Assembly: GCA_002269645.1 (NCBI GenBank)
Contig: NIVC01000317.1
Coordinates: 310,001-374,000 of the forward strand
Origin: Macrostomum lignano
Taxonomy: Eukaryota
Reading direction: 5' to 3'
Length of the DNA stretch: 64,000 bases
Part shown: in pieces, positions 15,241-64,000 of the stretch
Position numbering within the stretch: the stretch's first letter is position 1
How the letters are laid out: each line of letters opens with the position of its first letter
Translations under genes and position numbers: made by a program
Notes under the pieces: generated by a model
Databases searched by the model: none
What the model was told of the DNA's origin: nothing
What the model saw: only the letters and a program-made list of their open reading frames with translations

Positions 15241-15419
15241 AGCTGTACACGGTCGCCACTGTGAAGCGCCCTCTCTCATCCTGGGAGGACAAGCACGCTT
15301 GGATCTCTGCCAGAGAGAGTTTTCCCTACGGTCACTACAGCCTGCTACATTTTACCGCTCTTGGCCATTAGATTAATTTATGAGTTGTATGATACGTAAT
15401 AAATTGTGTGATAATAATG

Positions 15420-15513
15420 TGGCGGCCCCCCAGTCCATGGACTGAACAGCCGTACGCAGCCTTCAGATGCACCGCGCAATGGCTGCGGCTAAGCTGTCGG
15501 TAAGCTGTATTCA

Positions 15514-17308: not shown

Positions 17309-17363
17309 TACGCCATGTGCATCTCGAGAGTCAAGAGAAACTCTGATAACGCGCTAAAGTACG

Positions 17364-18323
17364 TGTAATGATCCGCTAGCTTAGTGTTAGGCGTCGCACT
17401 ACGTCAGCAGTTCCCTCGCCCTGAGTTGCTGTCTGCCGCTGGTCGGCTTCCCGTTCCCCCCCCCCCTTTTGTCTGGCTGCTGCCCTTTTCCCTTGCGCTG
17501 TTCGTTTCCTGCCCCTCTGTTCTCAGTAGTATACTGTCTCTCTGCAGTATCTCTCTGCAGTCTCTCTGCAGCCTCTCTGCAGTATACTGTCTCTGTTTCG
17601 CTCCTTTCCCGGTTTCCCTGTCATGTGAGCAAGTCACATGACAGTTGTGTTCTTGGAGTCCTAAAGTGCAGTCAACATGTTTACTGGTCCTGTTCACAGG
17701 AGAATCACGTGCTTCGGGGCCCTTGCCTTCTTTAAGGTAAAGGGTGACTCACGTTTCTAAAAATGAATACTGAGTCATGCGGCCCTGTGCACTTTGCCCG
17801 CAGACCCTGCCTTCTCTAAGGCGGAGGGTGACGTCAGTTCTAAAAATAGACGCTGAGTCACAGCTTGGCGCACTCTGCCCGAAGACCTCAAGTGACGTCA
17901 ATTCTAAAAATAGAACAAGTCACGAGGTCTTGTGCGCTCTTGGGCAAGAGGAGAATCCCGCGCTATAAATAGGATCCCCTCCCCCTTGTTTCCGTCAAGG
18001 AGTTTCTAGTTTCTAAGTTTCTGCTCCGAGTTTTCCGAGACTTAGTCTTCTGCGAGTCTGAGATTGAACGCCCGGTCTCTGTCTGCGTACATTGAGTTTT
18101 CTGCTATTGGTCTGACTGAGACCCTCTAAAGCCAACCCCGAGCCTACGAGAGGCTAACACAGCCCTCCCATCAACCAACCAAGCCCGGCAGGTACTGCTG
18201 ACGAGACGTACTGTACGTTGAGCTGCAAATCTGCACATTGTGCTGAGTTAGTTGACTTCGTTATTTCGTTCCGACGGGAAGCTCACCTCACCGAAGGCCG
18301 AGACTGAAGGGACTGGTGGCAGC
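17364..18323 (+). mobile_element. LTR-like segment followed by primer-binding site
   Basis: Starts tgtaatg; repeat-rich U3; TATAAATA at 17964; tggtggcagc at 18314-18323; no internal ORFs follow. Confidence 0.55.
17745..17971 (+). promoter_or_regulatory. Cluster of 3 AP-1 and 2 CRE motifs upstream of a TATA box in the LTR
   Basis: TGACTCA 17745, TGAGTCA 17771 and 17854, TGACGTCA 17829 and 17893, TATAAATA 17964. Confidence 0.55.
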
Positions 18324-18949
18324 ACTAACTACGCTACTAAGAGCTAAGAAGGCTTCCGACAGAAGAGGTTCGAGACTTAAGGTAAAGCTTAAGTGCCTAA
18401 ACCGGGAAGCAAAGGCGAACTACTTCATACGAGTAACTTCGCAATTTACTTGCATAGCTCATTTTTATGTTATAGCGCTTTATTTCCTCTCTTTATCTGC
18501 TGCTTAGTACAGAATGTACTAAGATGTACTAAGAATGTACCTCATTGAAATTCCCAGCTTCGACTTTGATGCTATGAATTCAAGCAGTTGAAATCTGTGT
18601 CTATCTGAGTGGCTAAGTTGATCAGTCTTTGATAAATCTGAAGAGCCAAAACTGTCGCGGTTTTTTGCCTTCCTCATGTACTCTTGCTCTCGATGCAGTG
18701 CTTTTTTGAAGGATTGACGGCAGATTGCACAGATTTGGTCGTTCATCGAGATCGAGGTGGCTTGCGAACACCATCTGTTCCTCTATTGCGTCTACTACAA
18801 CAAAAGTAGAGTTCAGTTTTTAATAATTTCCTAAATTTCACATGCTTTTCTTCAGTTGATTTCTTGTAAGAAATCAATAGTACCGTTTGCAAGGTTTATA
18901 TTATTATTGAAATGATTTTGTCTATTACATAATACTTTAGGACGCACTC

Positions 18950-20899: not shown

Positions 20900-21706
20900 T
20901 TGTTTAAATATCTAATTTTTGTTTGAATTTTTCTTTGTTTAAAATCTTACCTTTTGTTTGAATGCTGCCCCCATTCCCCAAAAAATAGTATAAAAGGAGG
21001 CAAGTTGGCCCGAAATAAAAAGTAACCTGCTTAACCGTTCTTTATCGCCGGGAAACTCTTAGTAAAACAAGCTTGAAGTTTGGTTAAGACTTATCTCGTC
21101 ATTTCTTTCTAAATAGGGAGAACCCAGAACTAGAAATCTGAATAGGGAAACCTGAGGTCGTGGAGCCCCAGGACTAGGAGTCTAAATAGGGAGAACTCGA
21201 GGTCGTGGAGACCCAGAGCTAGGAGTCTGAATAGGGAGAACTCGAGGTCGTGGAGACCCAGAACTAGGAATCTGAATAGGGAAAACCTGAGGTCGTGGAG
21301 ACCCAGAGCTAGGAATCTGAATAGGGAGAACTTGAGGTCGTGGAGACCCAGAGTTAGGAGTCTGAATAAGGAGAACTCGAGGTCATGCAGACCCTAAGAA
21401 AGCCGTACAGGCTAGCAATAGACATTAAGCGCTAGGTATTAGGGGATTAGATAGTTACCGCTGGACACCCTTGATCCTCGGAAAACGCCAGAATTTCGGA
21501 CATAATTAGGGAACTAGGCAGTGTCTTACCGCTCGGGCACTAAACGCTATCACGAGGCTATCAAGAAAACCGCGTGAATTAGATATTTCTAAGAAAGTAG
21601 CATAGTCTGAGGCAGCCAACGCTACAAATAGTAGGCAGCTTGGTAACAAATCGGTGAAATTTTAGTTATGAACGATTAAGACTGGTACAAATTGGTGGCA
21701 TAGTGG
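20900..21706 (+). mobile_element. Gypsy-type LTR (left boundary uncertain) ending ..ggtaca, plus PBS
   Basis: PBS tggtggcatagtgg at 21693; 21400-21690 is homologous to 26060-26338 (shared tgtcttaccgctcgggcact). Confidence 0.6.
21108..21395 (+). repeat. 45-bp tandem array, about 6 copies, inside the LTR
   Basis: tctgaatagggagaactcgaggtcgtggagacccagagctaggag at 21181, 21226, 21271, 21316, 21361. Confidence 0.9.
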
Positions 21707-34680: not shown

Positions 34681-35534
34681 GCTGGGAAAGCAGATCGTTC
34701 GCGGACTTGCGAAGTCTCAATTAGGAAAAGGTATGAGGCAGGGAAAATATTGGGAAATACGTAAAACTGTTTGAGGTAGTCGATGCCAACAACAGTGCAC
34801 TACAAGGTAGTCAATGCCTAGCTTTTCGCACAAGTAAAGTAACAATAACCATTGCATTCTGATTTTCTTTTCTTTTTTTGAAGTAATAAAGTTTTTGTTA
34901 AATATTTCGGTTTTCCTGTGTCACTCCTTATCACTAAATTAATAGAAATAGGGAAGCAGGAAGCCTGGTGGCAGCAAATCTACCAAAATCTAAAACCAGT
35001 AAATCCACTAGTAAAATCCTTAGCAGTAGAAACCAGTAGCCCTAATTGCGATGTACCATGCGTGTCCAATTGGTGGCAGCTTAGAGGATTAGAATACCCG
35101 AGAAGCGCATACATTAGACTGGTGCAGAGAAAGGATTAGTGGATTAGTAAGAGGATTAACGGATTAACTCATATGTGCTGAAATGAGAACTAAAACACAA
35201 AATTACTAATTAGGTTCTAAATTAGAGAATTAATGTACATAGTCAGTTGGTCTAAGATTGTCTGATCTCAGATTAACGGATTAACGGATTAGGAACGGAT
35301 TAACGCTCCTGAAAGGAATTTTAACTTAGTTTCTTCGCTAGAAGATTAGTAAGGTCTCAATTAAGACCAGAAGTAAGGCGGAAGTAATAAAGTTAGTAGT
35401 CGATGCTATTTTATTAACTAAAGTCTTACCATTAGGCAAATTAGCAGCTAAATTTGGAGTCTTGCCAATTTACTGACCAAAATTATTAAACCAGAAGCGT
35501 TAATTCTAAAATCTAACCTAAAAACTAAACTAAT

Positions 35535-36550: not shown

Positions 36551-36825
36551 CCAGCAGTAGATCCTTAACAGACTGTAGCCTCACAACCTGTAAATAGCAG
36601 CGATAGTTATTCTGTAAATAGTGAATTAAATTCTTCAGTAGGCATGCGCAAACATTTAATCAATCATTTAATCAGCCAAACATTTACTCTCAGCACTTTT
36701 CAAACGCACCACAACAACAGCGTTATTCTAGCAAGCAGCAGCTAAAACAACCAAAAATAATTGAACAAACTAAAAAGCAAAGTTACGATCCGTACATCAC
36801 TGGCAGCATTTTAAATAGGGAAATA

Positions 36826-37805
36826 CGAGGGGTGTCCAAAAAGTAGTGATACTTTTAACCGTAGCTCTCGTTATATAGCTTCCTGTGATTTAAAATTTTA
36901 TGAACTGATAGCGGCAAATCTCTTCTACAGACTGCTTTTTGAATTTTTAATATTGATACCAGAGAACAAAAGTTATACCCACAAAAGTAACAGTACCTGT
37001 ACCATAGAGTTACACAGATTATATCAAAATTTATGATAGTCGACTTCTGCACTTATTCATTAAGAAGGCATCGATAAATGTCTTGTTTAAGCAATACCAA
37101 AGCCCAATTGCAAAATTATGCTCACTGCGACTGACTGAAATTTGTCTATGGACAGAATCATGCGCAGAAAAATAAAGCATTAAATTCATTACTTTACTTG
37201 CAAACAGAGGAGCTTGCATTTTGCAATTGATTTCATTGCCCATACTCGACAACACACATGGATGTGCACTCAGTTGTTGCTCAGCAAAGTACTATCTTCA
37301 CTCTTTGGGGTGCTGGCCATAGTGCCTCAGAAATTCACGCAAAACTTTGCTCTGCGCACGGATTCTCTGCAGTCAGCAAAATGACATGAGTTTATCGATG
37401 GATGGAGCAGTTCAGCAAGGGAAGGACTGACTTGGCAGATCAGCATCGGACGGGGCGGCCATACGTTCATCGACCTGGCGGACTCCATTCTGAATCTTCT
37501 TGATGAGGACTCCCGAATGACCATTTGAGAGATCGCTGACAGGTTGGACAAGCCGAAATCAACAATTCATAGAAGCTTACTCGGCATGGATCTCGTGAAG
37601 CTCAGCCTATAATTTGTGTAACTCTATGGTACAGGTACTGTTACTTTCATGGGTATAACTTTTGTTCTCTGGTATCAATTTTAAAAATTCAAAAAGCAGT
37701 CTGTAGAAGAGATTTGCCGCTATCAATTCATAAAATTTTAAATCACAGGAAGCTATAGAACAAGAGCTACGGTTAAAAGTATCACTACTTTTTGGACACC
37801 CCTCG
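36826..37805 (+). mobile_element. Non-autonomous Tc1/mariner element inserted in the Gypsy protease
   Basis: About 190-bp TIRs starting cgaggggtgtccaaaaagtag; TA TSD; internal RWMEQFSKGRTDLAD..GRP / DSRMTI*EIADRL HTH remnant; removal restores NREIVYLLDTGS. Confidence 0.92.
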
Positions 37806-37904
37806 TAGTTTATCTATTAGACACTGGCAGTAATAGAAATATCTTAGGACGCAAAACCTGGAAGCATCTTTTCTTCCAGGCCATTCTTCCATTGCCATGG
37901 GCAG

Positions 37905-48717: not shown

Positions 48718-50307
48718 TCACTTGAACGACTAAAAGAGCTCGACAAGAAGTCAGCTGCCATCGCACGGCGCTTCAGTCGACTCAAAGAATCAGTTGCACT
48801 CAGATTTGCGCAGAAAGTTGCGGCGACAGCCCGTCCGACACGAGCAGAAGCTTCAGTGAGCCACTTATCAACTTCAACTCGGACCACTCATGACGTACTA
48901 ACCACACTTCGCTAATAGACAGCTCTATAGTGGCGCAACCAAGCAACAGTGTAGCCAGTGTTGGCAGCAGCTGGCAGCCAGCATTGGCAACCGGGGGATG
49001 TAGCAGTGGCGTCCAGACTCCCATGGTCGTCGAGCCTACCGGCTCGCAGTATTCAGACAACGACGATGAGGACGTAACTTCTAGATCTATCGTTGAGGAA
49101 CCAGGCGAAGAAGCTCCAGATGACGACTATTGGAGTGGCGCTCCAATGGCATTGGACGCCATCGAGCAGTGCGACGATTGTGAGGACTTTACTGAAGATG
49201 ACCGCCCACCAGAGGATGAGAATGTACCATGTGTTGGCAATGGAGCCACCCATAACCCAGAAGCTATCGATATGCAGCCGCGTAGGAGAAATGGCCTCTT
49301 CGCGAATTCACGTACCCCTGTCTCATCAACGTGCTCCCCGAAGTTTCCATGAGCTCGGAATGTTTCGGGGCCACGAACTTGAGGCATGGTTAATCGTCTA
49401 CGGCCCTATGGTGATGGAAGGCATCCTGCTCGACCGCTACTACTGGCACCTTCAACTACTGTCCACGGCCATGTTCTGGCTTACATTGGATGGAGCGCCT
49501 CTAATGGAAGTGATGCAAGCCAGCCGGCTTCTGCACTACTTTTACAGTCAGCTGCCTCAGATGTACTCCAACATGGCACTTACGTAAAATGCACACCAAG
49601 TTTGTGAGCACTTTGTATCGTACGTAACTTTATACGGGCCAATGTGGAGGATGTCTGCAGGCTTGTTTGAGTCGTCGCATGCAAATCTTCGCACCAAAAT
49701 CCACGGCTCCAGGAATGTTGACGCCGAAGTTGCCGGCCTTCTACAGCGCCAATTGGCGCGAAGGCAAATGATGGCCGAATTGCAACTCCCTAACATCTTC
49801 AGCGAGGGACCACCAAATGGTGAGGTTCAACTGCCGGATGGTGTGCGACTGCGCAATCCTATTCGTCGCCAATTGGCGGGCGGTGACACACGGTATGGCA
49901 AAGCAGTACTGACCAGCGGGCTACGCATTGAAATATTCATGCCTCGCCTAATCCACCAGCGCGCCGCCTCGTGCTTTGTTACTGTCCTCATCCCTGACTC
50001 TCGTCAGCCGTTTGAATTCGCACGAATTGAGGAAATTCAACTCCGGGACAATTGTGCATGGGTTCGCCTACGCCGCCTTCTGACTGTGGAGCCGCACGAG
50101 GACAATCATCCGTTGTACCGCTTGAATGGCGAACCGGACCACGGCGGATGCTCAGTCGCACACGTTCGGCGCCTGCATGCCAATTCATTTTGCGCAGTTG
50201 ACAAATACTATTTCGAAATCCCTGCTAACTACGTACTCGCTACGTGTTGTGTGAACGACCGCTACGTAGCATTCGTCCCCCATATTCAGTTTTCTTACGC
50301 AGCGTGA
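48718..50307 (+). pseudogene. EnSpm/CMC (CACTA-like) transposase, internally deleted
   Basis: PRSFHELGMFRGHELEAWLIVY..LLDRYYWHLQLL..T*NAHQV..YGPMWRMSAGLFESSHANL matches the C-terminal half of animal EnSpm-type transposases; acidic N-terminal piece upstream. Confidence 0.75.
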
Positions 50308-50530: not shown

Positions 50531-51385
50531 TATATCAAAATGTAACGTGTCAATTGGCCCTTTGTCACAATGTTTCAAAATGTTTCACAACACAATGCTT
50601 CTTTCCGTGTCACGTCTGCACATTGCTATGTGGTATCACAAGAATTTAAATTTTTATTTATTAACGTCTAGCACTGCCATTTCTCCTGTATATATACATG
50701 TAAGCGCGTCTTTGCAACTCTGTATGGCATCCATATGTACATGACCTTTTAGTTTACCTTTTCATTTTGCTCTTTTCCAGAATGCGTTCTTCAACTGTGT
50801 TTTGCTTATATACAGCATCTGTGTCCAAGTGTGTTTTTGTGCCATTTGTAATATGACTTCACTTATGCCACTTCTATAAGTCTAGTGTACGTAAATACAG
50901 CGATTTGGCCTATCGGAAATTTAATACACCCTTAGGCCAATCAGGTCAATCGTTCGTTCGCTATTCAGAAACTAACCATGATTTGTTAATTTGTCACTAA
51001 ATTTGGCTTCTCACTAAAGATTTCCCGTCTAGATTAGTATAGTAATGGCGGCAAAACTGTATGTCTGCTGTCTGTCAGTAAAGTCAGTAATCTACTAGGT
51101 ATGTATGGAAATTGGTACATGTATTTGCATTAATACGAGCGTATATAAATACAGGGGTATCGTATTCCATGAAGATAGAATATATAAGGGTATCTTATTG
51201 CGTCTGAGAATGTTGTTCATTGTCAGTTTGTCAAGCGTCAAGAATACCTTACTAGTAACGTAGTAGTAATAAATTGTTAACAATTTCCTAGTGCACAGCC
51301 CAGCAGCATGGTATTCTCCAAACTCAGATGTGTGTCCGACAAACTTGCATGTGCATAACAGACGACATACACTTGCTTTTCAGAC

Positions 51386-52105
51386 ATGTCGAACGACCTA
51401 AGCCCTAGAGAAGTTAACTTCTCCGCCATCATGGATGACCTCCTTCGAGACGTGGCGCGAACTGTGTCGCCGACTTTTGTCGACCTGATCGGTTACCGGT
51501 CCTCAGCTGATTGGGCAGAGTCGCAGGATCCTATGTGTGACGCAGGTTCACCGTCTCTGTTTGACGACATTGAGCCGGCTGGCTCGACTGCGAACGACGC
51601 CAATGACGATCAGCTTCGCTACAACGCCGAGACGCAGCTCGGTTCGCCGTCTCTGTTTGACGAAATTGAGCCGGCTGGCTCGACTGCGAACGACGCCAAT
51701 GACGATCAGCCCGCGGCGCGAGACTACGAGCCGGCTGAGAACTTAAAGAAACTGCGCGCGGAGTATAACCGCCTGCCTGACCCGCCAAATCAAACGAATT
51801 ACGCTTGCGTACGCGTTGTTCGAAAACGGGCGGATCGGCAGGAGCTGGACCCGCACTGCTGCCCCGACTGTGAGGCATGGTTTTCTAATTTGTCGCCTCG
51901 TACAAAGCAGAGACGGCTGCAAGAGCACGGGCGGCACCGCAGTAACCAGCCTCACCAGAAGCGCGACCATAACTTTTTAAAAATTGAAATGCCTGACACT
52001 CAGCCAGAAGCGCTTTTTGAGGCCATGAGGTTAGGCAAGAGGCGCATGCGTCCACTGACGGGTGCTAGCGCCGGGCCGTCTAACACACGGGATAAGAAGC
52101 TGTAG
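51386..52105 (+). CDS. CtIP/Sae2 (RBBP8-like) C-terminal-domain protein, 239 aa, uninterrupted
   Basis: aa 138-206 NYACVRVVRKRADRQEL.PHCCPDCEAWF..LQEHGRHR..NFL..MPDTQ align without gaps to my recollection of the human CtIP C-terminus (VVRK, CxxC, RHR, NF, PxTQ); ttttcag acceptor just before the ATG. Confidence 0.75.
   Translation: MSNDLSPREVNFSAIMDDLLRDVARTVSPTFVDLIGYRSSADWAESQDPMCDAGSPSLFDDIEPAGSTANDANDDQLRYNAETQLGSPSLFDEIEPAGSTANDANDDQPAARDYEPAENLKKLRAEYNRLPDPPNQTNYACVRVVRKRADRQELDPHCCPDCEAWFSNLSPRTKQRRLQEHGRHRSNQPHQKRDHNFLKIEMPDTQPEALFEAMRLGKRRMRPLTGASAGPSNTRDKKL
51545..51710 (+). repeat. In-frame 70-bp duplication (period 96 bp) within the CtIP-like ORF
   Basis: GSPSLFD(D/E)IEPAGSTANDANDDQ twice; 2 nucleotide mismatches. 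Confidence 0.9.
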
Positions 52106-52959
52106 GCAGCATAGGCTGTACGTCACTGTTAATTAATTAAAAATATTGTACTGTAACTACTACTAGTAGTACTTCTAGTCGAGCCAGCCGGCTCAATGTC
52201 ATGAGTAGTGTAGCGAGTAGTAGTAGCGTTTCTCTTTGAGTATGGGCAGCTCCCAGCAGTAGCTTGCCGGCTTCCATGCCATCTCCGTCTCATAGCTAAA
52301 ATATATTTGCGTTGACTTGTCAGCGTCGATTGCACATATGCTAATGAAAGTAAGGAAGGATATTGAATTCCATTACGAAAAATCATTGCAGAATAATGGG
52401 AGAAGGAAAGAAGACTGACAGAATGAATTCCAAGAAGGACCACGAGAAGCGGGCCGAAAAAGAGAAGCGGAAAGATAAAGAGCAGCGGAAAGATAGACCT
52501 GATACTGACAATACTGGCCTTGTGAGAAAAGCTAGCCGTGTGATTCAGAACTATAAGAGCTAGTTAGTTGAGAAGCTGAGCATCCCACACAACACACTTG
52601 ATGAGACGAAGTTTTTTTCAATAAAAGCAGAATGACTCAGTATTGTCTGTAGCTTAAGAAGTAATTTGCAGTTTCCACTAGCTTGAAAAATCTTGCTGCA
52701 ATAGGAATTGAACGCCCACCCTGCCCAAACTCAATTGTGTCATGCTTAAGTAAGATTGAAAATCTGGCAGAGCATCAAGACAGCTCGCTTGTTTCTAAAA
52801 TTTTAAAATCGTTTCCACTCAGCGACATTCTGCTTTAAGCTCAGATTTACGAGAATCTGGTAAGCAAACTCAACCATCACATAAAATATAGAATATACTC
52901 GTAGAATAGATAATGTAGATTAATTAATTATATGTGGATTTTCTCCTTTGACAATCCTC

Positions 52960-54150: not shown

Positions 54151-54786
54151 ATGGCCTTCAATAAACCACTATTTCTTGGTTCTGCTATAGACATTCAGTT
54201 AGCAGTAACTAAATTGCCACCCATTTTCTCCACTGGAAAATATCCTGGCGAATTTTATATTCCAGGATATTCTTTCACTGGCCAAGGAACAAATTTAGAC
54301 AAGAGACTCAATCTAATTACAGACTGGCCTCAGTATGACAGTCTACCAATTAACCCAATAGATTGGACTGCTTACTATCATGACAAAAGCTATAGAGATG
54401 CTGAAAAGACGTCTTCAACTCCAGAGGAAGCCTTAGCAAAGAAGCACATTGCTGATGAAAAAATGATAACTTATTTAGAGTCTATTCCAACCAGTGACTT
54501 GTCTGTGAAAGAGAGACTCGTTCGAAATCTAGTAAAGCGTATTATCAAAGCTAAAGTTCGGTTTGGATTAGGCATTCATACTCACAACCCCAACAATTGT
54601 ATAGACTGTCTAAATATATACAGTGAGGGTCTTAGCTATAATGATGCAGTGAAATTGCATAGGGAATACAGAAAACCAAGACTGTTTAGAAAAATTAAAT
54701 TAAAGAGAGGAGGAGGGAAGAAGAGAGAAGAGAAGAGAAGAGAAAGGAGAATAAGTTGCCTTATCAATATGATCTTATCTATTTGA
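54151..54786 (+). CDS. Adintovirus/Maverick parvovirus-type phospholipase A2 (PLA2X) running into an integrase-like N-terminus; 3' end disrupted
   Basis: EFYIPGYSFTGQGT.L.KRL..PINPIDWTAYYHDKSY..ADEKM..KAKVRFGLG fits parvoviral PLA2 (DxxAxxHDxxY); LHREYRKPRLFRKIK resembles the Polinton integrase start. Confidence 0.75.
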   Translation: MAFNKPLFLGSAIDIQLAVTKLPPIFSTGKYPGEFYIPGYSFTGQGTNLDKRLNLITDWPQYDSLPINPIDWTAYYHDKSYRDAEKTSSTPEEALAKKHIADEKMITYLESIPTSDLSVKERLVRNLVKRIIKAKVRFGLGIHTHNPNNCIDCLNIYSEGLSYNDAVKLHREYRKPRLFRKIKLKRGGGKKREEKRRERRISCLINMILSI

Positions 54787-58229: not shown

Positions 58230-59230
58230 AAAGATGATCAGACTATCGTGCTTATATTTCACCTTCGGCTTCGGTTTACGATCACCCACACGTATATTGC
58301 CCATTGAAATGATCGTGAACCGAATTGCTGGCCGTAGGAAAGCGTATCAAATACGACAAATCTCAGTCTTGTCTCAGTCAATTTTAACTATAGCTTCGAT
58401 TGGTGGCAGCAAACTACCTTTCGTGATTTATATTATAGCATTGGGATTAATTATCGATTCGAGAGGGAACGCGACTCATCAAGAAATTATCGGTCGCACT
58501 CTATCAGACCATCTCAGGGTACCGCACTTCGGCTGGTGCAGAATAAGCAGTTTTGCCTTAGGCCCAAGCATCGCAGCTACGGCTAGTCAAAGTTATTTGT
58601 GATATCTGTCAGCGGAAATAGATTTCGCGAGCTAAGAGTTCGCGAACATTTAGCCCCAGTTAATCCGAGCCAGACGCTTAGTCATTACTGGTTAAAAGTC
58701 CAGGTGATTCATAGTCTGCCAGCTAGCCCAGTGGAAATCTAGAATCTTAGAGAGACAGATAGCCCAGTGGAAATCTAGAATCCTAGAGAGACAGATAGCC
58801 CAGTGGAAATCTAGAATCCTAGAGAGACAGATAGCCCAGTGGAAATCTAGAATCCTAGAGAGACAGATAGCCCAGTGGAAATCTAGATTCCTAGAGAGAC
58901 AGATAGCCCAATGGAAATCTAGATTCCTAGAGAGACAGATAGCCCAGTGGAAATCTAGAATCCTAGAGAGACAAATAGCCCAGGGGAATTCTAGGACGGG
59001 CGAGACGCTTAGCCCAATTCCGCTTAATTAGGACCAAATCGTTAGTCGGTGAGATGCTACTCGTTAGTAATAAGACACGAACTGGAGTTAATAAATCATC
59101 TTGCCAGTAACACGTCAAGTTTAATAAATTCAACGCCCGTTACATTTGGTGTTCAGCGATAGGATTAATAATTCGGGACAAGTTGTGATATAATTTAGGA
59201 CCGATTACAATTGGTGGCACCGTGTAGGAT
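58230..59230 (+). mobile_element. LTR-like segment ending ..cgttaca with two PBS-like motifs
   Basis: tggtgttcagcgataggat at 59147 and tggtggcaccgtgtaggat at 59212; internal tandem array as in the 21-kb LTR; left boundary uncertain. Confidence 0.5.
58725..58996 (+). repeat. 36-bp tandem array, 7 copies + partial
   Basis: agcccagtggaaatctagaatcctagagagacagat with period 36. Confidence 0.92.
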
Positions 59231-59529
59231 TTAAACAAGCCGTCAAATTTGCATAATTTTACACCTATTACAAATGTACATCATTTAAAAAATCTGTATC
59301 TGCCCTTAATTTTATGAGTTTTCAGTGAGACTCCCACCAGTACCGTAGCTAGGATTTTGGAATGAATCCTCTGATACTCTGCATCCTCTGCAACCTTGCC
59401 TCGGCGAAACTGCTGACCGATGAGCTGCCGTTATGCAGTCGCCAGCATGCACCGGGTCGTCAGCCTGAGCCGCACTGATGGCAGCCTGTCAGGTGGCAGT
59501 CTGTCTGGTATAAATACAAGACAGAAGGC

Positions 59530-60125
59530 AGGAAAGCATCACAAACCCGAAAAATCACAACTCCGAAAAGCGCCTTCCATCATAAACCCGAAATATCATA
59601 AACCAGAAATATCATAAACCCGAAATATCACAAACCCGAAATATCATAACTCCGAAAGTGTTAGAAACACACATAATAAACCCGAAATATCACAAACCCG
59701 AAATATCACAAACCCGAAATATCATAAACCCGAAATATCACAAACCCGAAATATCACAAACCCGAAATATCATAAACTCGAAATATCACAAACCCGAAAT
59801 ATCACAAACCCGAAATATCATAAACCCGAAATATCATAAACCCGAAATATCACAAACCCGAAATATCATAAACCCGAAATATCACAAACCCGAAATATCA
59901 CAAACCCGAAATATCATAAACCCGAAATATCACAAACCCGAAATATCACAAACCCGAAATGTCATAAACCCGAAATATCATAACTTCGAAAGTTCTGGCA
60001 ATGTCCAATACTATTTTGGTTTTCGGAGTTATGATATTTCGGGTTTATGATATTTCGGGTTCCAGCAATGTCCAATACTATTTTGGTTTTCGGTGTTATG
60101 ATATTTCGGGTTTATGATATAACTG
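59530..60125. repeat. 16-bp satellite (aaacccgaaatatcaY) with inverted units at the right end; foldback-like element
   Basis: About 25 direct units at 59577-59985; inverted tgatatttcgggttt units at 60020-60120. Confidence 0.85.
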
Positions 60126-61857: not shown

Positions 61858-64000
61858 AGGCCGCGGATGACCTCGGTTGGCTCGGAAGGCGGCGCCACGG
61901 CTGCGGCAGCAAAGTTCAGCACAGCAGGGACACGCTGAGGTCGGCGCAGCGTGCAACGTCGCACTGAGCGGTGGCGCGAGCGCAACCGGTGAGGGCGACT
62001 CAGTCGCGCGGCCAGGCGCCTGTCGGCCCCAGTCCCTGCAACTTCAACTATGGATCCGCCGGGTGGCGCCGGGGACCACGAGGCCAACCTTTATCTGGCC
62101 CTAGCTGTACCAGGTGGCCGCCTCAGACTCGGCACGATGAACTGCCGAACTCTGAAGGCCCCCTGGCGTCGCACCATCCTTGTCCAGCTGGCCCACGACC
62201 TCGTCTCGCTGCGGGAGGTTTCTATCGTGGCTGAGCCAGGGCTCCACTCTGAGAACCTCGGAGCCGGCTGGAGCCTCCTGTACACGTCGGCAGACAATTG
62301 CGGTCGGGGCGGTGTCAGTGTACTGATCGGACCGCGCCTCCAGCAGAGCGTGCACTGCATTTCGCTGTCCCCGCGACTGATACAGGTCGACCTGCGACTG
62401 CGCGTCCGCTGCATCCGACTGTTCTGCGCGTATGCACCCACCACTGCTCACACCAAAGAGGCTCAAGCCTTCTTCGACTTCCTGGCTTTGCAGCTGAAAG
62501 AGGTGCCAAACCGCGACACGCTGGCGGTGCTCGGAGACCTGAACGCAGTTCCGCGGAGGTCCGAGCGCTCGCCCTATGTCGCGGGACGCGAGAATGCCAA
62601 CATCGATGCACAGGAGGACCTGCTTGACCGGCTGGACCTGGTGTCCGCGAACACCCAGTTCCGCAAGCCCTCTGCCCGCCTGGTCACCTTTGCGGGCTGC
62701 AAGAGAAGGCGATAGAACGCACGCGGGCGGAACGCCACGAAGAGACTGGCGCAACTCGATCATGCGCTGGTTCGCACTCGCGAGCGCCGCCGCGTCACCA
62801 ACTGCGAAACCATGGCTCTGCTGGCTCTCCGGTCAGACCATCGACTTCTGCTCTGCGACTTGCGGCTCCTTGACCAGCTCTACCGACCACCAAAGCAGCG
62901 GCCACGGCGCTACTATCGCGCTCTGTTGGACACATGCGTCAAGCGACAATACGCAGGCGCCTTCGTCGGCGCGCTTGGAGACCAGCGAGAGGCGGAGTAT
63001 TCCGACATCAGCACCGCCGTTAGAGCCGCTGCGGTGCAGACGGTCCCGCTGATGCGGCCAGCACAAAAATCGCTGCCTGTCTGGCAGAGCGACCCGACCA
63101 TCAGGTAAGCGTCCCTCAACATCGAGCGACTCCGCAGAAACTGGCGACCCACGGGCGACGCTGAAGACGCATTTGAGCGCCTTCTAGACGAGCGGCAGCA
63201 GGCCGCTGTCGACGACGCCGTTAGGTCCATCACTGCAGCCGGCCCAGATGTGAAGATCCGCGCAGTGTGGACGGCCGTCCGGACTCTGACGGGGCGCAAA
63301 AAGCGCGTGGCGCTGAATCTGGCCGGTGACACCCCGGAGGAGCGCAGGAACGAATTGCGCGACTTCTTTGCCGGCATAGTGAACGCGCCCGCGTCGGCGC
63401 TGCCCGCCAGCTTTGCGCTCCCACTGGACACGCCGCTCCCAGCTGAGGAGGACTTCTGCACCAGACCAGTCACCACGAAGGACGTTGTGCTGTTCGCTCG
63501 GAAAACATCAGGCGGCAAGGCGCTCGGTCCCAACAAAGTCCCAGTCGAGGCGCTGCGGCTCCGCTGTGTGGCCTCCCAGGTCACAGGCATATTGAACCGC
63601 GTGCTTTCCGGCGCCCCGGCGCCCACCGAGTGGACCGTCGCGCACATCGTGCCGATCCCTAAGTAGGCAGGGACAACGCGGAAAGAAGACCACCGTGGGA
63701 TCTGGCTGGTCCTGCACCGCGAAGCTTTTCAACCGGCTGTTCCTCGATCGTCTGCAGTCGGTGCTGAACCCGTACCTGCGGTACTAGTAGAACGGATTCC
63801 GGCCGCAACGCAGTACAGTGACACAGATCCTCGCACTCCGCCGGGTCATCAAGGATGCGCGCATCCGCCAGTCTACCCTGATTATTGTCTTCGTTGACTT
63901 TCAAAAGGCGTTTGACTCGGTGTTAAGAGCCGCGCTTCCCTTTGTCCTACGAGCCTACCGGGTACCCCAGCAGCTAGTCAACGCTGTCATGGCACTGTAT
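61858..64000 (+). mobile_element. RTE-clade LINE (5' UTR, APE, RT start), continuing beyond the window
   Basis: RLGTMNCRTL, YAPT, LGDLNA, QLDHALV, SDHRLL; IVPIPK, GFRPQRSTVTQILALRR, VFVDFQKAFDSV; several stops. Confidence 0.92.

What the first reader, a model, noticed from the sequence alone, without database searches (positions are those of the whole stretch)
51386..52105. Stand-alone CtIP/Sae2 C-terminal-domain gene lacking the CDK switch, beside a transposase
Seen: the longest self-contained, uninterrupted ATG-to-stop ORF I could interpret in a window of decayed elements. Residues 138-206 align gap-free (about 20/69 identities) with the human CtIP C-terminus as I recall it: VVRK, C159xxC162, R183HR, NF and T205Q. 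Known: this domain stimulates Mre11-Rad50 endonuclease, and that activity needs CDK phosphorylation of T847-P. Here the TP position reads RD, the NFW tryptophan is L, and the N-terminal coiled-coil tetramerisation region is replaced by an acidic repeat. Inference: a captured, possibly cell-cycle-independent MRN activator or dominant-negative that steers repair of transposon excision breaks or hairpins. I know of no described transposon-borne CtIP/Sae2.
Basis: partly seen in the sequence, partly recalled or inferred. Interest (0 to 1): 0.85.

Follow-up and report, generated by a model that had tools for sequence, protein, structure and literature searches.

The report
Flatworm CtIP-like terminal exon, CDK site lost
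This open reading frame is a real, selectively maintained copy of the end of the DNA-repair gene CtIP/Sae2 in a Macrostomum-like flatworm; it lacks the usual cell-cycle phosphorylation site, as does the normal CtIP of a related worm, and nothing shows that a transposon carries it.

Summary
ORF 51386..52105 (+, 239 aa) matches Pfam SAE2 above the curated cut-off. It aligns gap-free with vertebrate CtIP C-termini and keeps VVRK, CxxC, RHR and TQ. R-D replaces the CDK T-P and L replaces the Trp.

- All 23 homologues are metazoan CtIP-family sequences; every named one is a CtIP/RBBP8 or an unnamed animal protein. The closest (53%) is the coiled-coil-bearing Macrostomum lignano CtIP, an ordinary three-exon host gene.
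- The ORF is collinear with that gene's last exon and starts 2 nt after a splice acceptor.
- The 'acidic repeat' is the normal pre-domain linker, carrying a recent in-frame 32-aa duplication. It does not replace the coiled coil.
- M. lignano CtIP also lacks the T-P (Q-A), so the loss is a lineage trait.
- dN/dS is about 0.25 and evolutionary rates are symmetric, which indicates long-term constraint.
- No TIRs or LTRs flank the ORF. The neighbouring 'transposase' is a pseudogene that no tool recognises.

Two questions remain open: whether this is the host's canonical CtIP or a divergent second copy, and whether upstream exons exist. Repeats shared with M. lignano at 77-94% identity against a saturated dS favour a second copy. 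No upstream exon was found in 51 kb.

The parts
51373..51383 (+). Splice-acceptor-like site (ttgcttttcag) ending 2 nt before the ATG. It could be a cis 3' splice site or an SL trans-splice acceptor.
   Evidence: Read directly from the sequence. The in-frame stop TAA at 51356-51358 lies upstream of it. M. lignano CtIP exon 3 starts at the equivalent place. 38.8% of M. lignano genes are trans-spliced (PMC5730564).
51386..52105 (+). CtIP/Sae2-family coding sequence, 239 aa, collinear with the terminal exon of M. lignano CtIP.
   Evidence: GC is 57% (GC3 63%) against flanks of 37-40%. dN is 0.51 and dS is saturated. The relative-rate test is symmetric.
51545..51710 (+). In-frame internal duplication: a 70-nt unit twice at 96-nt spacing, encoding GSPSLFD[DE]IEPAGSTANDANDDQ twice. 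It contains the SP-x-x-[LF]-type motif seen in the central region of invertebrate CtIPs.
51764..52060 (+). SAE2 homology region (aa 127-225): YNRLP, VVRK, C159xxC162, LS170P, R183HR, R193-D194 at the CDK T-P position, NF-L198, T205-Q, and KRRMRPL.
52136..52141 (+). ATTAAA, a possible polyadenylation signal 31 nt after the stop codon.
   Evidence: Read directly from the sequence. This is an inference only.
52177..52200 (-). A perfect 24-nt inverted copy of the ORF-internal motif GACATTGAGCCGGCTGGCTCGACT, 72 nt after the stop. Its meaning is unknown.
   Evidence: 3 sites in the window, 0 expected by chance. The long-range stem appears in both the MFE and the centroid fold.
48894..50304 (+). It is 5'-truncated, needs a frameshift near 49350, and has an in-frame TAA at 49585-49587.
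   Evidence: There is no Pfam family or homologue. Its resemblance to the C-terminal region of TNP2/CACTA-type transposases rests only on my recollection of motifs (GP.W..S..FES).

Best explanation
The ORF is a real CtIP/Sae2-family coding sequence of the host, a flatworm close to or within Macrostomum. It is not transposon cargo.

Anatomy (shown). It is the terminal-exon module of a Macrostomum-type CtIP gene. It begins at a 3' splice site. It runs through a disordered acidic linker with an SP-x-x-F-type motif, duplicated here, and then through the Sae2-like domain (YNRLP, VVRK, CxxC, RHR, TQ, KRRxRPL) to the stop codon.

History (shown). It has evolved under purifying selection at the same rate as the canonical M. 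lignano CtIP. It shares about 11 derived residues with that protein, and both have lost the CDK T-P site and the Trp. So in this lineage the Mre11-Rad50-Nbs1 cofactor is evidently not gated through the T847-equivalent phosphosite.

Mechanism (inferred from the family). The C-terminal module contacts MRN and licenses the Mre11 endonuclease cut that starts 5' end resection and removes blocked or hairpin ends. The retained T205-Q site allows ATM/ATR input. An S-P site shared with M. lignano (LS170P), or the SP motifs in the linker, may have taken over CDK input.

Unresolved. The first question is whether this is the host's canonical CtIP, with coiled-coil exons that were not recognised or lie more than 51 kb upstream, or a divergent second copy consisting of this exon alone. 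I lean towards a second copy, because the gene split (dS saturated) is far older than the repeats shared with M. lignano (K about 0.06-0.27). In a trans-splicing flatworm, an exon of this kind with an orphan acceptor and an ATG 2 nt downstream could be expressed as a stand-alone mRNA.
For: Family identity:
- Pfam SAE2 above the gathering cut-off.
- Exhaustive phmmer over 1.84 billion representatives gave 23 hits. All are CtIP-family sequences; every named one is a metazoan CtIP/RBBP8 or an unnamed animal protein, and six come from unannotated assemblies.
- The best hit is M. lignano PAA88737.1/PAA54340.1, at 51-53% identity over the last 100-109 aa.

The M. lignano gene is ordinary:
- It has an N-terminal coiled coil and three exons: aa 1-134, 135-290 and 291-481.
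- It lies between acetyl-CoA synthetase and EMP24 in both homeologous loci.

Collinearity with the last exon, M. lignano versus window positions:
- SPVF 50 versus SPSLF 55 (and 87).
- YNKLP 83 versus YNRLP 127.
- CCPDC 113 versus 158; RHR 138 versus 183; KRR.RPL 173 versus 218.
- Length 191 versus 239 aa, or 207 aa without the 32-aa duplication.

Local and selection signals:
- Acceptor ttgcttttcag 2 nt before the ATG.
- The ORF is a GC island, 57% against 37-40% in the flanks.
- Codon-position identity 0.63/0.62/0.41; dN 0.51; pS 0.70.
- Relative-rate test: 3 window-unique against 4 M. lignano-unique changes at 52 conserved columns.
- The T-P position reads R-D in the window, Q-A in M. lignano and A-D in L002, while every other hit keeps [ST]-P.

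Host affinity:
- A window retroelement RNase H has M. lignano as its best named hit, at 66%.
- A full-length solo LTR of an active M. lignano family is present at about 77% identity.
- SINE-like cores match at 85-94%.

Against transposon cargo: no flanking TIR or LTR.
Against: - No upstream CtIP exon was found in 51 kb by tblastn, an HMM of N-termini, heptad/charge scans, or the RQTTL and PET motif anchors. Sensitivity for such poorly conserved exons is low, however.
- Neither the ACS nor the EMP24 neighbour is in the window.
- The ORF sits in 64 kb of decayed repeats with no other host gene.
- No transcript evidence is available.
- The ORF is not on record in any annotated proteome. If the host is M. 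lignano itself, it is unannotated there, which would suggest low or no expression.
- Intactness next to a dead neighbour is weak evidence for selection. Two lesions in about 1.4 kb predict about one lesion in 0.72 kb.
- Human CtIP 790-897 alone does not support resection-dependent repair in cells (PMC7261161). A stand-alone product would therefore not be a simple CtIP substitute.
Confidence: 0.6

Rival explanations
1. It is simply the last exon of the host's single canonical CtIP gene. The coiled-coil exons lie upstream, either beyond or hidden among transposon-filled introns. The host is a more distant relative of M. lignano, and the 53% identity reflects fast evolution of an ortholog. This overlaps with the best explanation; it differs only on the question of ortholog versus second copy.
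For: - Exon-level collinearity and an acceptor at the boundary.
- Symmetric rates and purifying selection, as expected for orthologs.
- No closer homologue of this ORF exists in the annotated M. lignano proteome.
- All complete CtIPs have an N-terminal oligomerisation domain, which is functionally required (PMC7261161).
Against: - dS is about 2 (saturated), against K of about 0.06-0.27 for three repeat families shared with M. lignano. Vertically inherited repeat copies cannot be younger than the species split.
- An intron longer than 51 kb would be needed, against a mean of 1.1-1.4 kb in M. lignano.
- The ACS-CtIP-EMP24 synteny is absent.
- The acceptor would give a phase-1 intron, whereas the M. 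lignano intron is phase 0.
Confidence: 0.35
2. It is a dead or dying partial duplicate: an orphan copy of the terminal exon, made by segmental duplication or captured by a Helitron- or Pack-type element. It is intact only because it is young or by luck, and it has no function.
For: - It sits in a gene-poor stretch of decayed repeats.
- It has no detectable partner exons.
- It is not on record in any proteome.
- Its neighbour's lesion density predicts only about one lesion in the ORF.
- L002 shows a comparable C-terminal-only copy with a stop codon at the Trp position.
- The internal duplication and the 24-nt inverted copy point to local rearrangement.
Against: - 47% amino-acid divergence from the nearest relative, with every family-invariant residue kept.
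- Third codon positions are far more diverged than first and second positions, and rates are symmetric. Most of its history was therefore spent under constraint.
- The 96-nt duplication preserved the reading frame.
Confidence: 0.2
3. One reading: a transposon-borne CtIP C-terminal module, cargo of a CACTA/TNP2-like DNA transposon. It is co-transcribed with the transposase and steers MRN-dependent processing of excision breaks or hairpins.
For: - It is on the same strand, 1.08 kb downstream of a transposase-like pseudogene (my recollection of motifs only).
- Both are GC-rich islands.
- A 24-nt motif occurs in direct and inverted orientation near the 3' end, loosely reminiscent of subterminal repeats.
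- It diverges from the host-type CtIP and lies in a repeat-rich context.
- Polycistronic, trans-spliced units exist in M. lignano.
Against: - No terminal repeats bracket the unit.
- The 24-nt motif occurs nowhere else in the window, and two of its three copies come from the in-frame duplication.
- The neighbour has no Pfam or database support as a transposase, is truncated, and carries a stop and a frameshift.
- There is one copy in 64 kb.
- No SAE2 relatives turned up in viral/mobile or metagenome contig scans.
- No literature precedent was found.
- Loss of the CDK site is shared with the canonical host-type gene.
Confidence: 0.07

Closest known systems
Macrostomum lignano CtIP homologue (BOX15_Mlig004387g1/g2; PAA88737.1, PAA54340.1)
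   Same: - 51-53% identity over the last 100-109 aa.
- The same landmark order as its terminal exon.
- Shared derived residues: CCPDCEAWF, LSP, GRHR-NQ, IEMP, GKRR.RPL.
- Shared loss of the CDK T-P and of the Trp.
   Different: - The M. lignano protein has two upstream exons with a coiled coil and a Q/S/T-rich linker, and it lies between ACS and EMP24. The window ORF has none of these nearby.
- The window keeps T-Q, where M. lignano has T-P.
- The window carries a 32-aa internal duplication.
- dS between the two is saturated.
Vertebrate CtIP/RBBP8 and yeast Sae2/Ctp1 (Pfam SAE2, PF08573)
   Same: - The C-terminal Sae2-like domain, with the VVRK..R..L, CxxC, RHR and T-Q (T859-equivalent) motifs and the basic RR.RP tail.
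- About 29% identity, gap-free, with human residues 810-878.
   Different: - No [ST]-P at the T847/S267 position. The literature describes this site as stringently conserved and essential (PMC10706839).
- Trp replaced by Leu.
- No N-terminal tetramerisation coiled coil in the ORF.
- Only 239 aa long.
Engineered human CtIP fragment 790-897 ('CtIP delta-3', PMC7261161)
   Same: If the ORF is translated on its own, it is a natural analogue: a Sae2-like C-terminal region without the oligomerisation domain.
   Different: - The human fragment keeps T847, and it failed to support SSA in cells.
- The window ORF additionally has a linker of about 125 aa with SP motifs, and it lacks the CDK site.
L002 / P0007 (Logan assembly SRR31628425, 910-nt contig, organism unknown)
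   Same: - A C-terminal-only SAE2-like sequence.
- It shares RLQ.HG[RK]HR.NQP.Q[KR], an Asp at the P848 position, and the PDQPE / KRRR.PL tail when read through its stop.
   Different: - Only 38% identical.
- It lacks YNRLP and any linker.
- It has an in-frame TGA exactly at the Trp position.

Membership tests
SAE2/CtIP family (Pfam PF08573) | Profile-HMM match above the curated gathering score | tested here: met
   23.5 bits for the whole ORF and 26.0 bits for the C-terminal 102 aa, against a cut-off of 19.8.
SAE2/CtIP family (Pfam PF08573) | Nearest relatives in an exhaustive search are CtIP/RBBP8/Ctp1 proteins | tested here: met
   23 hits at E<=1e-3. All are CtIP-family sequences, and every named one is a metazoan CtIP/RBBP8 or an unnamed animal protein.
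SAE2/CtIP family (Pfam PF08573) | Invariant C-terminal residues (V-R..R..L, CxxC, R-H-R) | tested here: met
   R146, R151, L154, C159, C162, H184 and R185 are invariant across 20 sequences and present in the ORF.
SAE2/CtIP family (Pfam PF08573) | CDK phosphosite [S/T]-P equivalent to human T847 / yeast S267 | tested here: not met
   The position reads R193-D194. It is also absent from M. lignano CtIP (Q-A) and L002 (A-D), and present in all other hits.
SAE2/CtIP family (Pfam PF08573) | PI3KK (ATM/ATR) site T-Q equivalent to human T859 | tested here: met
   T205-Q206 within PDTQ.
SAE2/CtIP family (Pfam PF08573) | N-terminal oligomerisation coiled coil | tested here: inconclusive
   Absent from the ORF: the AlphaFold model shows only helix 12-26 in the N-terminal 110 residues and no long helix. 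No such exon was found in 51 kb upstream. These exons are too poorly conserved to exclude.
SAE2/CtIP family (Pfam PF08573) | Stimulates Mre11-Rad50(-Nbs1/Xrs2) endonuclease | not testable with these tools
   This needs biochemistry.
Transposon passenger (cargo) gene | Lies between the terminal repeats (TIR/LTR) of an element, with a target-site duplication | tested here: not met
   No inverted or direct repeats bracket the ORF. The candidate arms at 48.2 and 51.2 kb failed on alignment.
Transposon passenger (cargo) gene | Linked to a recognisable transposase of the same element | tested here: not met
   The neighbour at 48894-50304 has no Pfam family (E<=10) and no homologue, and it is a truncated pseudogene. 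The only verified DNA-transposase remnant is a mariner HTH_48 at about 37.3 kb.
Transposon passenger (cargo) gene | Multiple dispersed copies sharing flanks | not testable with these tools
   There is one copy in the window. The host genome cannot be searched here.
Processed retrocopy | Intronless copy spanning former exon junctions, with a 3' poly(A) tract and flanking duplications | tested here: not met
   Homology starts at the position of an exon boundary with the acceptor retained. No poly(A) tract follows the ORF.

The most novel reading that the evidence does not exclude
A naturally occurring 'headless' CtIP. This would be a divergent second CtIP-family gene, or possibly transposon cargo, that consists only of the terminal exon. 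It would be expressed as its own mRNA by spliced-leader trans-splicing at the orphaned acceptor and maintained by selection. It would act without tetramerisation and without the CDK switch, as a cell-cycle-independent activator or competitive modulator of Mre11-Rad50-Nbs1 in a highly regenerative flatworm.
Probability: 0.2. Interest if true: 0.75.

Novelty: new variant of a known kind. Interest (0 to 1): 0.4.

Why it matters
CtIP/Sae2 decides whether a DNA break is resected. Its CDK site (T847/S267) is regarded as the conserved cell-cycle switch: the T847A mutant cannot rescue Ctip-null mice. Here both a canonical Macrostomum CtIP and this ORF lack that site while otherwise remaining under purifying selection. 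That makes a natural test case for how resection is licensed without the site.

If the ORF is also expressed alone, it would be a natural C-terminal-only CtIP. That would bear on what the Sae2-like domain can do without oligomerisation.

If it turns out to be just the last exon of the host gene, it is ordinary annotation.

Tried and rejected
Searches that found nothing:
- Word-indexed homologue searches of the ORF and of the upstream 'transposase'.
- PDB by sequence. A profile search of PDB finds only N-terminal CtIP coiled-coil structures (7bgf, 4d2h). I therefore did not attempt a fold comparison of the C-terminal domain. The AlphaFold model is also low-confidence (mean pLDDT 62.7).
- Exact look-ups of 13 window ORFs, tried to identify the host.
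- A metagenome scan and viral-contig scans for SAE2 relatives.
- Rfam at gathering threshold over the whole window.

Upstream exon hunt. All of these were negative or led to retroelement Gag/Pol: tblastn with all 25 homologues, an HMM of CtIP N-termini, regex and heptad/charge scans, the RQ[TS][TK]L and [IV]PET anchors, and blastp of upstream frames against CtIPs.

TIR idea. Two short inverted matches at about 48.2 and 51.2 kb were rejected on alignment. The 83-nt repeat at 34986/46361 is not an LTR pair.

Idea that the upstream block is an intact intron-containing gene. Rejected: the TAA at 49585 replaces a codon inside a continuous frame, and a frameshift is needed near 49350.

Using the ORF's intactness beside a dead neighbour as proof of selection. 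Rejected as weak, because only about one lesion would be expected in the ORF.

Processed retrocopy. Rejected: the acceptor is retained, homology begins at an exon boundary, and there is no poly(A) tract.

Helitron-type capture. A palindrome followed by CTAG|T lies at about 52155-52180. I considered this, but it cannot be tested from a single copy.

Literature. Searches for transposon-borne CtIP/Sae2 and for PF08573 returned nothing relevant.
Full report
**1. What is there**

The window holds an ATG-to-TAG open reading frame at 51386..52105 on the + strand, 239 codons long.
- The open frame extends only 9 codons further upstream, to a TAA at 51356-51358.
- A pyrimidine-rich acceptor-like sequence, ttgcttttcag, ends at 51383, two bases before the ATG.
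- The ORF is a sharply bounded GC island: 57% GC (GC3 63%, CpG o/e 1.27), against 37% upstream and 40% downstream.
- An open frame this long arose in 1 of 200 shuffles of the window.
- It is not the longest ORF in the window, but the longer ones are reverse-transcriptase fragments.

**2.

- Pfam SAE2 (PF08573) matches above the gathering score: 23.5 bits for the whole ORF and 26.0 bits for the C-terminal 102 residues, against a cut-off of 19.8.
- BLASTP against the human CtIP C-terminus (typed from my memory) gives 20/69 identities without gaps for residues 138-206. The same register holds against database RBBP8 sequences.
- VVRK, C159xxC162, R183HR, NF and T205-Q are present.
- The position of the CDK site T847-P reads R193-D194, and the Trp of NFW is L198.
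- Residues 54-76 and 86-108 are a recent duplication: a 70-nt unit, 97% identical, spaced 96 nt apart and therefore in frame.

**3. Relatives**

The word-indexed search found nothing. An exhaustive phmmer search over 1.84 billion cluster representatives found 23 proteins at E<=1e-3.
- All 23 are CtIP-family sequences. Every named one is a metazoan CtIP/RBBP8 or an unnamed animal protein; the sources include fish, lamprey, amphioxus, starfish, scallop, whelk, spiders, a sea spider and a nemertean. Six come from unannotated assemblies.
- The best hit by far (99 bits) is a Macrostomum lignano protein. Its longer isoform PAA88737.1 has an N-terminal coiled coil.
- Its gene has three exons (aa 1-134, 135-290 and 291-481). 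In both homeologous loci it lies between acetyl-CoA synthetase and an EMP24/GP25L gene, so it is an ordinary host gene.

**4. The ORF is collinear with that gene's last exon**

| Landmark | M. lignano exon 3 (191 aa) | Window ORF (239 aa) |
|---|---|---|
| SP-x-F motif | SPVF, 50 | SPSLF, 55 and 87 |
| YN[KR]LP | 83 | 127 |
| CCPDC | 113 | 158 |
| RHR | 138 | 183 |
| KRR.RPL | 173 | 218 |

- Subtracting the 32-residue duplication brings all positions within about 13 residues of each other, and the length to 207 against 191 aa.
- SP-x-x-[LF]-type motifs recur in the central regions of most invertebrate CtIPs.
It does not replace the coiled coil, which in the canonical gene is encoded by separate upstream exons.

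**5. The missing CDK site is a lineage trait**

In the alignment of all hits, [S/T]-P and the following F/Y-W are present everywhere except in three sequences:
- the window ORF (R-D, F-L);
- the canonical M. lignano protein (Q-A, F-F);
- the fragment L002/P0007 (A-D, and a TGA at the Trp codon).

The literature calls this CDK site and the neighbouring T-Q site stringently conserved, and T847A cannot rescue Ctip-null mice (PMC10706839). The loss is therefore notable. It is a feature of Macrostomum-type CtIP in general, though, and not an adaptation of this particular copy.

The window ORF and M. lignano share an S-P at one column (NLS170P / DLSP). The window keeps T-Q where M. lignano has T-P. 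Whether either site substitutes for the CDK site is inference.

**6. Selection**

Over 121 aligned codons, window against M. lignano:
- Identity is 0.63, 0.62 and 0.41 at codon positions 1, 2 and 3.
- dN is 0.51 and pS is 0.70, which gives a dS of about 2 (saturated).

A relative-rate test against 22 outgroups is symmetric. At 52 conserved columns there are 3 window-unique and 4 M. lignano-unique changes, and the two share about 11 derived residues. The domain has therefore evolved under the same constraint as a canonical CtIP for most of its history. That argues against an old pseudogene and against unconstrained cargo.

**7. Host, and ortholog versus paralog**

Evidence that the host is close to M. 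lignano:
- A window retroelement RNase H ORF has M. lignano as its best named hit, at 66% against about 50% for other animals.
- Window 17363-18412 is a full-length solo LTR, about 77% identical to an M. lignano LTR retrotransposon whose own two LTRs are 100% identical.
- Two short interspersed repeats match M. lignano copies at 85-94%. For one of them only a central core of about 75 nt is shared and the flanks differ, as in a conserved-core SINE.

Vertically inherited repeat copies cannot be younger than the species split. So the host is either M. lignano, or a close relative, or it received these elements horizontally. Against K of about 0.06-0.27 for the repeats, the saturated dS of the CtIP sequences favours an old duplication, meaning a second divergent CtIP-like gene, over orthology.

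Against that reading:
- No closer homologue exists in the annotated M. lignano proteome.
- No window ORF is on record anywhere.

I cannot settle this without the host genome.

**8. Is it stand-alone?**

Nothing upstream resembles CtIP exons 1 or 2. The negative tests were tblastn with all homologues, an HMM of CtIP N-termini, heptad/charge scans, and the RQ[TS][TK]L and [IV]PET motif anchors. The few candidates were LTR-retroelement Gag/Pol. ACS and EMP24 are absent from the window.

In M. lignano the mean intron is 1.1-1.4 kb and 38.8% of genes are SL trans-spliced (PMC5730564). Two readings follow:
- An upstream intron longer than 51 kb would be exceptional.
- An orphan acceptor followed by an ATG 2 nt later is what a trans-spliced first coding exon looks like.

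These points favour a one-exon unit, but the N-terminal exons are so poorly conserved that this is not proof. The AlphaFold model (mean pLDDT 62.7) shows only short helices (12-26, 118-127, 148-153, 160-165 and 171-181) and no long coiled coil.

**9. Transposon linkage**

- I recognise motifs typical of the C-terminal part of TNP2/CACTA-like transposases (F.A.EW..W..Y.P, GP.W..S..FES). That rests on memory only.
- Pfam at E<=10 and a database search give nothing.
- The block lacks its 5' part, needs a frameshift near 49350, and has a TAA at 49585.
- No inverted or direct repeats bracket the ORF.
- The 24-nt motif GACATTGAGCCGGCTGGCTCGACT occurs only inside the ORF's two repeat units and once inverted 72 nt after the stop. 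It could form a long-range stem, but an ATTAAA at 52136 may place it beyond the poly(A) site. It remains unexplained.
- Scans of viral/mobile and metagenome contigs, and the literature, gave no precedent for mobile SAE2 genes.

**10. Mechanism**

Shown: family membership, motif content, selective constraint, exon-level homology, and absence of the CDK site.

Inferred from the family: the product's C-terminal module engages Mre11-Rad50-Nbs1 and licenses the endonucleolytic cut that starts resection. ATM/ATR input is possible at T205-Q, and there is no T847-type CDK gate.
- If upstream coiled-coil exons exist, this is a normal Macrostomum-type CtIP.
- If the ORF is translated alone, human data predict that it cannot replace full-length CtIP, because the 790-897 fragment gives no SSA in cells and oligomerisation is required (PMC7261161). 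It would more likely modulate or compete.

**11. Verdict**

This is a real CtIP/Sae2-family coding sequence of a Macrostomum-like flatworm, and a new variant of a known kind. The transposon-cargo story is unsupported. The interesting residue is twofold: the lineage-wide loss of the 'essential' CDK site, and the possibility (about 0.2) of a selectively maintained, headless, trans-spliced CtIP paralog.

Noticed in passing
window 54151-54786 (+): A 211-aa ATG ORF matches Pfam Phospholip_A2_4 (PF08398, the parvovirus VP1-unique-region PLA2) at 27.1 bits against a cut-off of 23.9. It has the YxGxG...D...HDxxY-type motif and lies at the edge of an AT-rich (34-35% GC), heavily decayed stretch at 54-58 kb. 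It may be a fragment of an endogenous parvovirus- or densovirus-like element. No relatives were found in viral contigs or PDB.
   Followed up: partly
window 52177-52200 (-), with 51566-51589 and 51662-51685 (+): A perfect 24-nt inverted copy of a motif from inside the CtIP-like ORF lies 72 nt after its stop. None is expected by chance. It forms a 24-bp long-range stem in both the MFE and the centroid fold of the putative transcript. Its origin and meaning are unexplained.
   Followed up: partly
L001 12740-13312 and L005 (M. lignano contigs NIVC01000176.1 and NIVC01002929.1): The canonical, coiled-coil-bearing M. lignano CtIP lacks the T847-equivalent CDK site (it reads Q-A) and the Trp (F). 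It has T-P where other species have the ATM/ATR T-Q site. This site is reported as stringently conserved and essential in mice.
   Followed up: partly
L002 524-900 (Logan SRR31628425 contig, organism unknown): A C-terminal-only SAE2-like sequence. Its single in-frame TGA sits exactly at the conserved Trp codon, and read-through restores homology to the end (…RQF*AVDLGPDQPE…KRRRIPL). It is either a pseudogene or an organism that reads UGA as Trp.
   Followed up: partly
window 36821-37810: A 990-bp element with 203-nt terminal inverted repeats (96% complementary). It encloses a remnant of a Mos1/mariner HTH_48 domain (33 bits): an internally deleted mariner nested between the Gag and Pol ORFs of an LTR retroelement.
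   Followed up: yes
window 17363-18412: A full-length solo LTR, about 77% identical to the LTRs of an M. lignano retrotransposon (L004). That element's two LTRs are 100% identical, so the family is active in M. lignano.
   Followed up: yes
window 15418-15501 and 105-242: Short interspersed repeats shared with the M. lignano CtIP loci at 85-94% identity. The first has a conserved core of about 75 nt, divergent flanks and an (ATT)n tail, like a conserved-core SINE.
   Followed up: partly
window 48894-50304 (+): A GC-rich (53%) pseudogene with one frameshift and one TAA. Its motifs remind me of the C-terminal region of TNP2/CACTA-like transposases, but no tool recognises them.
   Followed up: partly
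window 59499-60061, 58670-59029 and 21100-21439: Three tandem arrays: a 16-nt unit (about 35 copies, AACCCGAAATATCAYA) that ends in a short inverted copy of itself, a 36-nt unit (about 10 copies), and a 45-nt unit (about 7 copies).
   Followed up: no
window 52363-52563 (+): A short Lys/Glu/Arg-rich ORF containing an 18-nt tandem repeat (GAGAAGCGGAAAGATAAA, 2.9 copies). The repeat shares a 12-nt string with the 3' end of the M. lignano CtIP coding sequence, probably by chance in low-complexity sequence.
   Followed up: no
window 62000-64000: A GC-rich (63%) end of the window with overlapping ORFs on both strands. There is a weak Exo_endo_phos match (62050-62715) followed by an RT fragment (63791-64000), which looks like a LINE.
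   Followed up: partly
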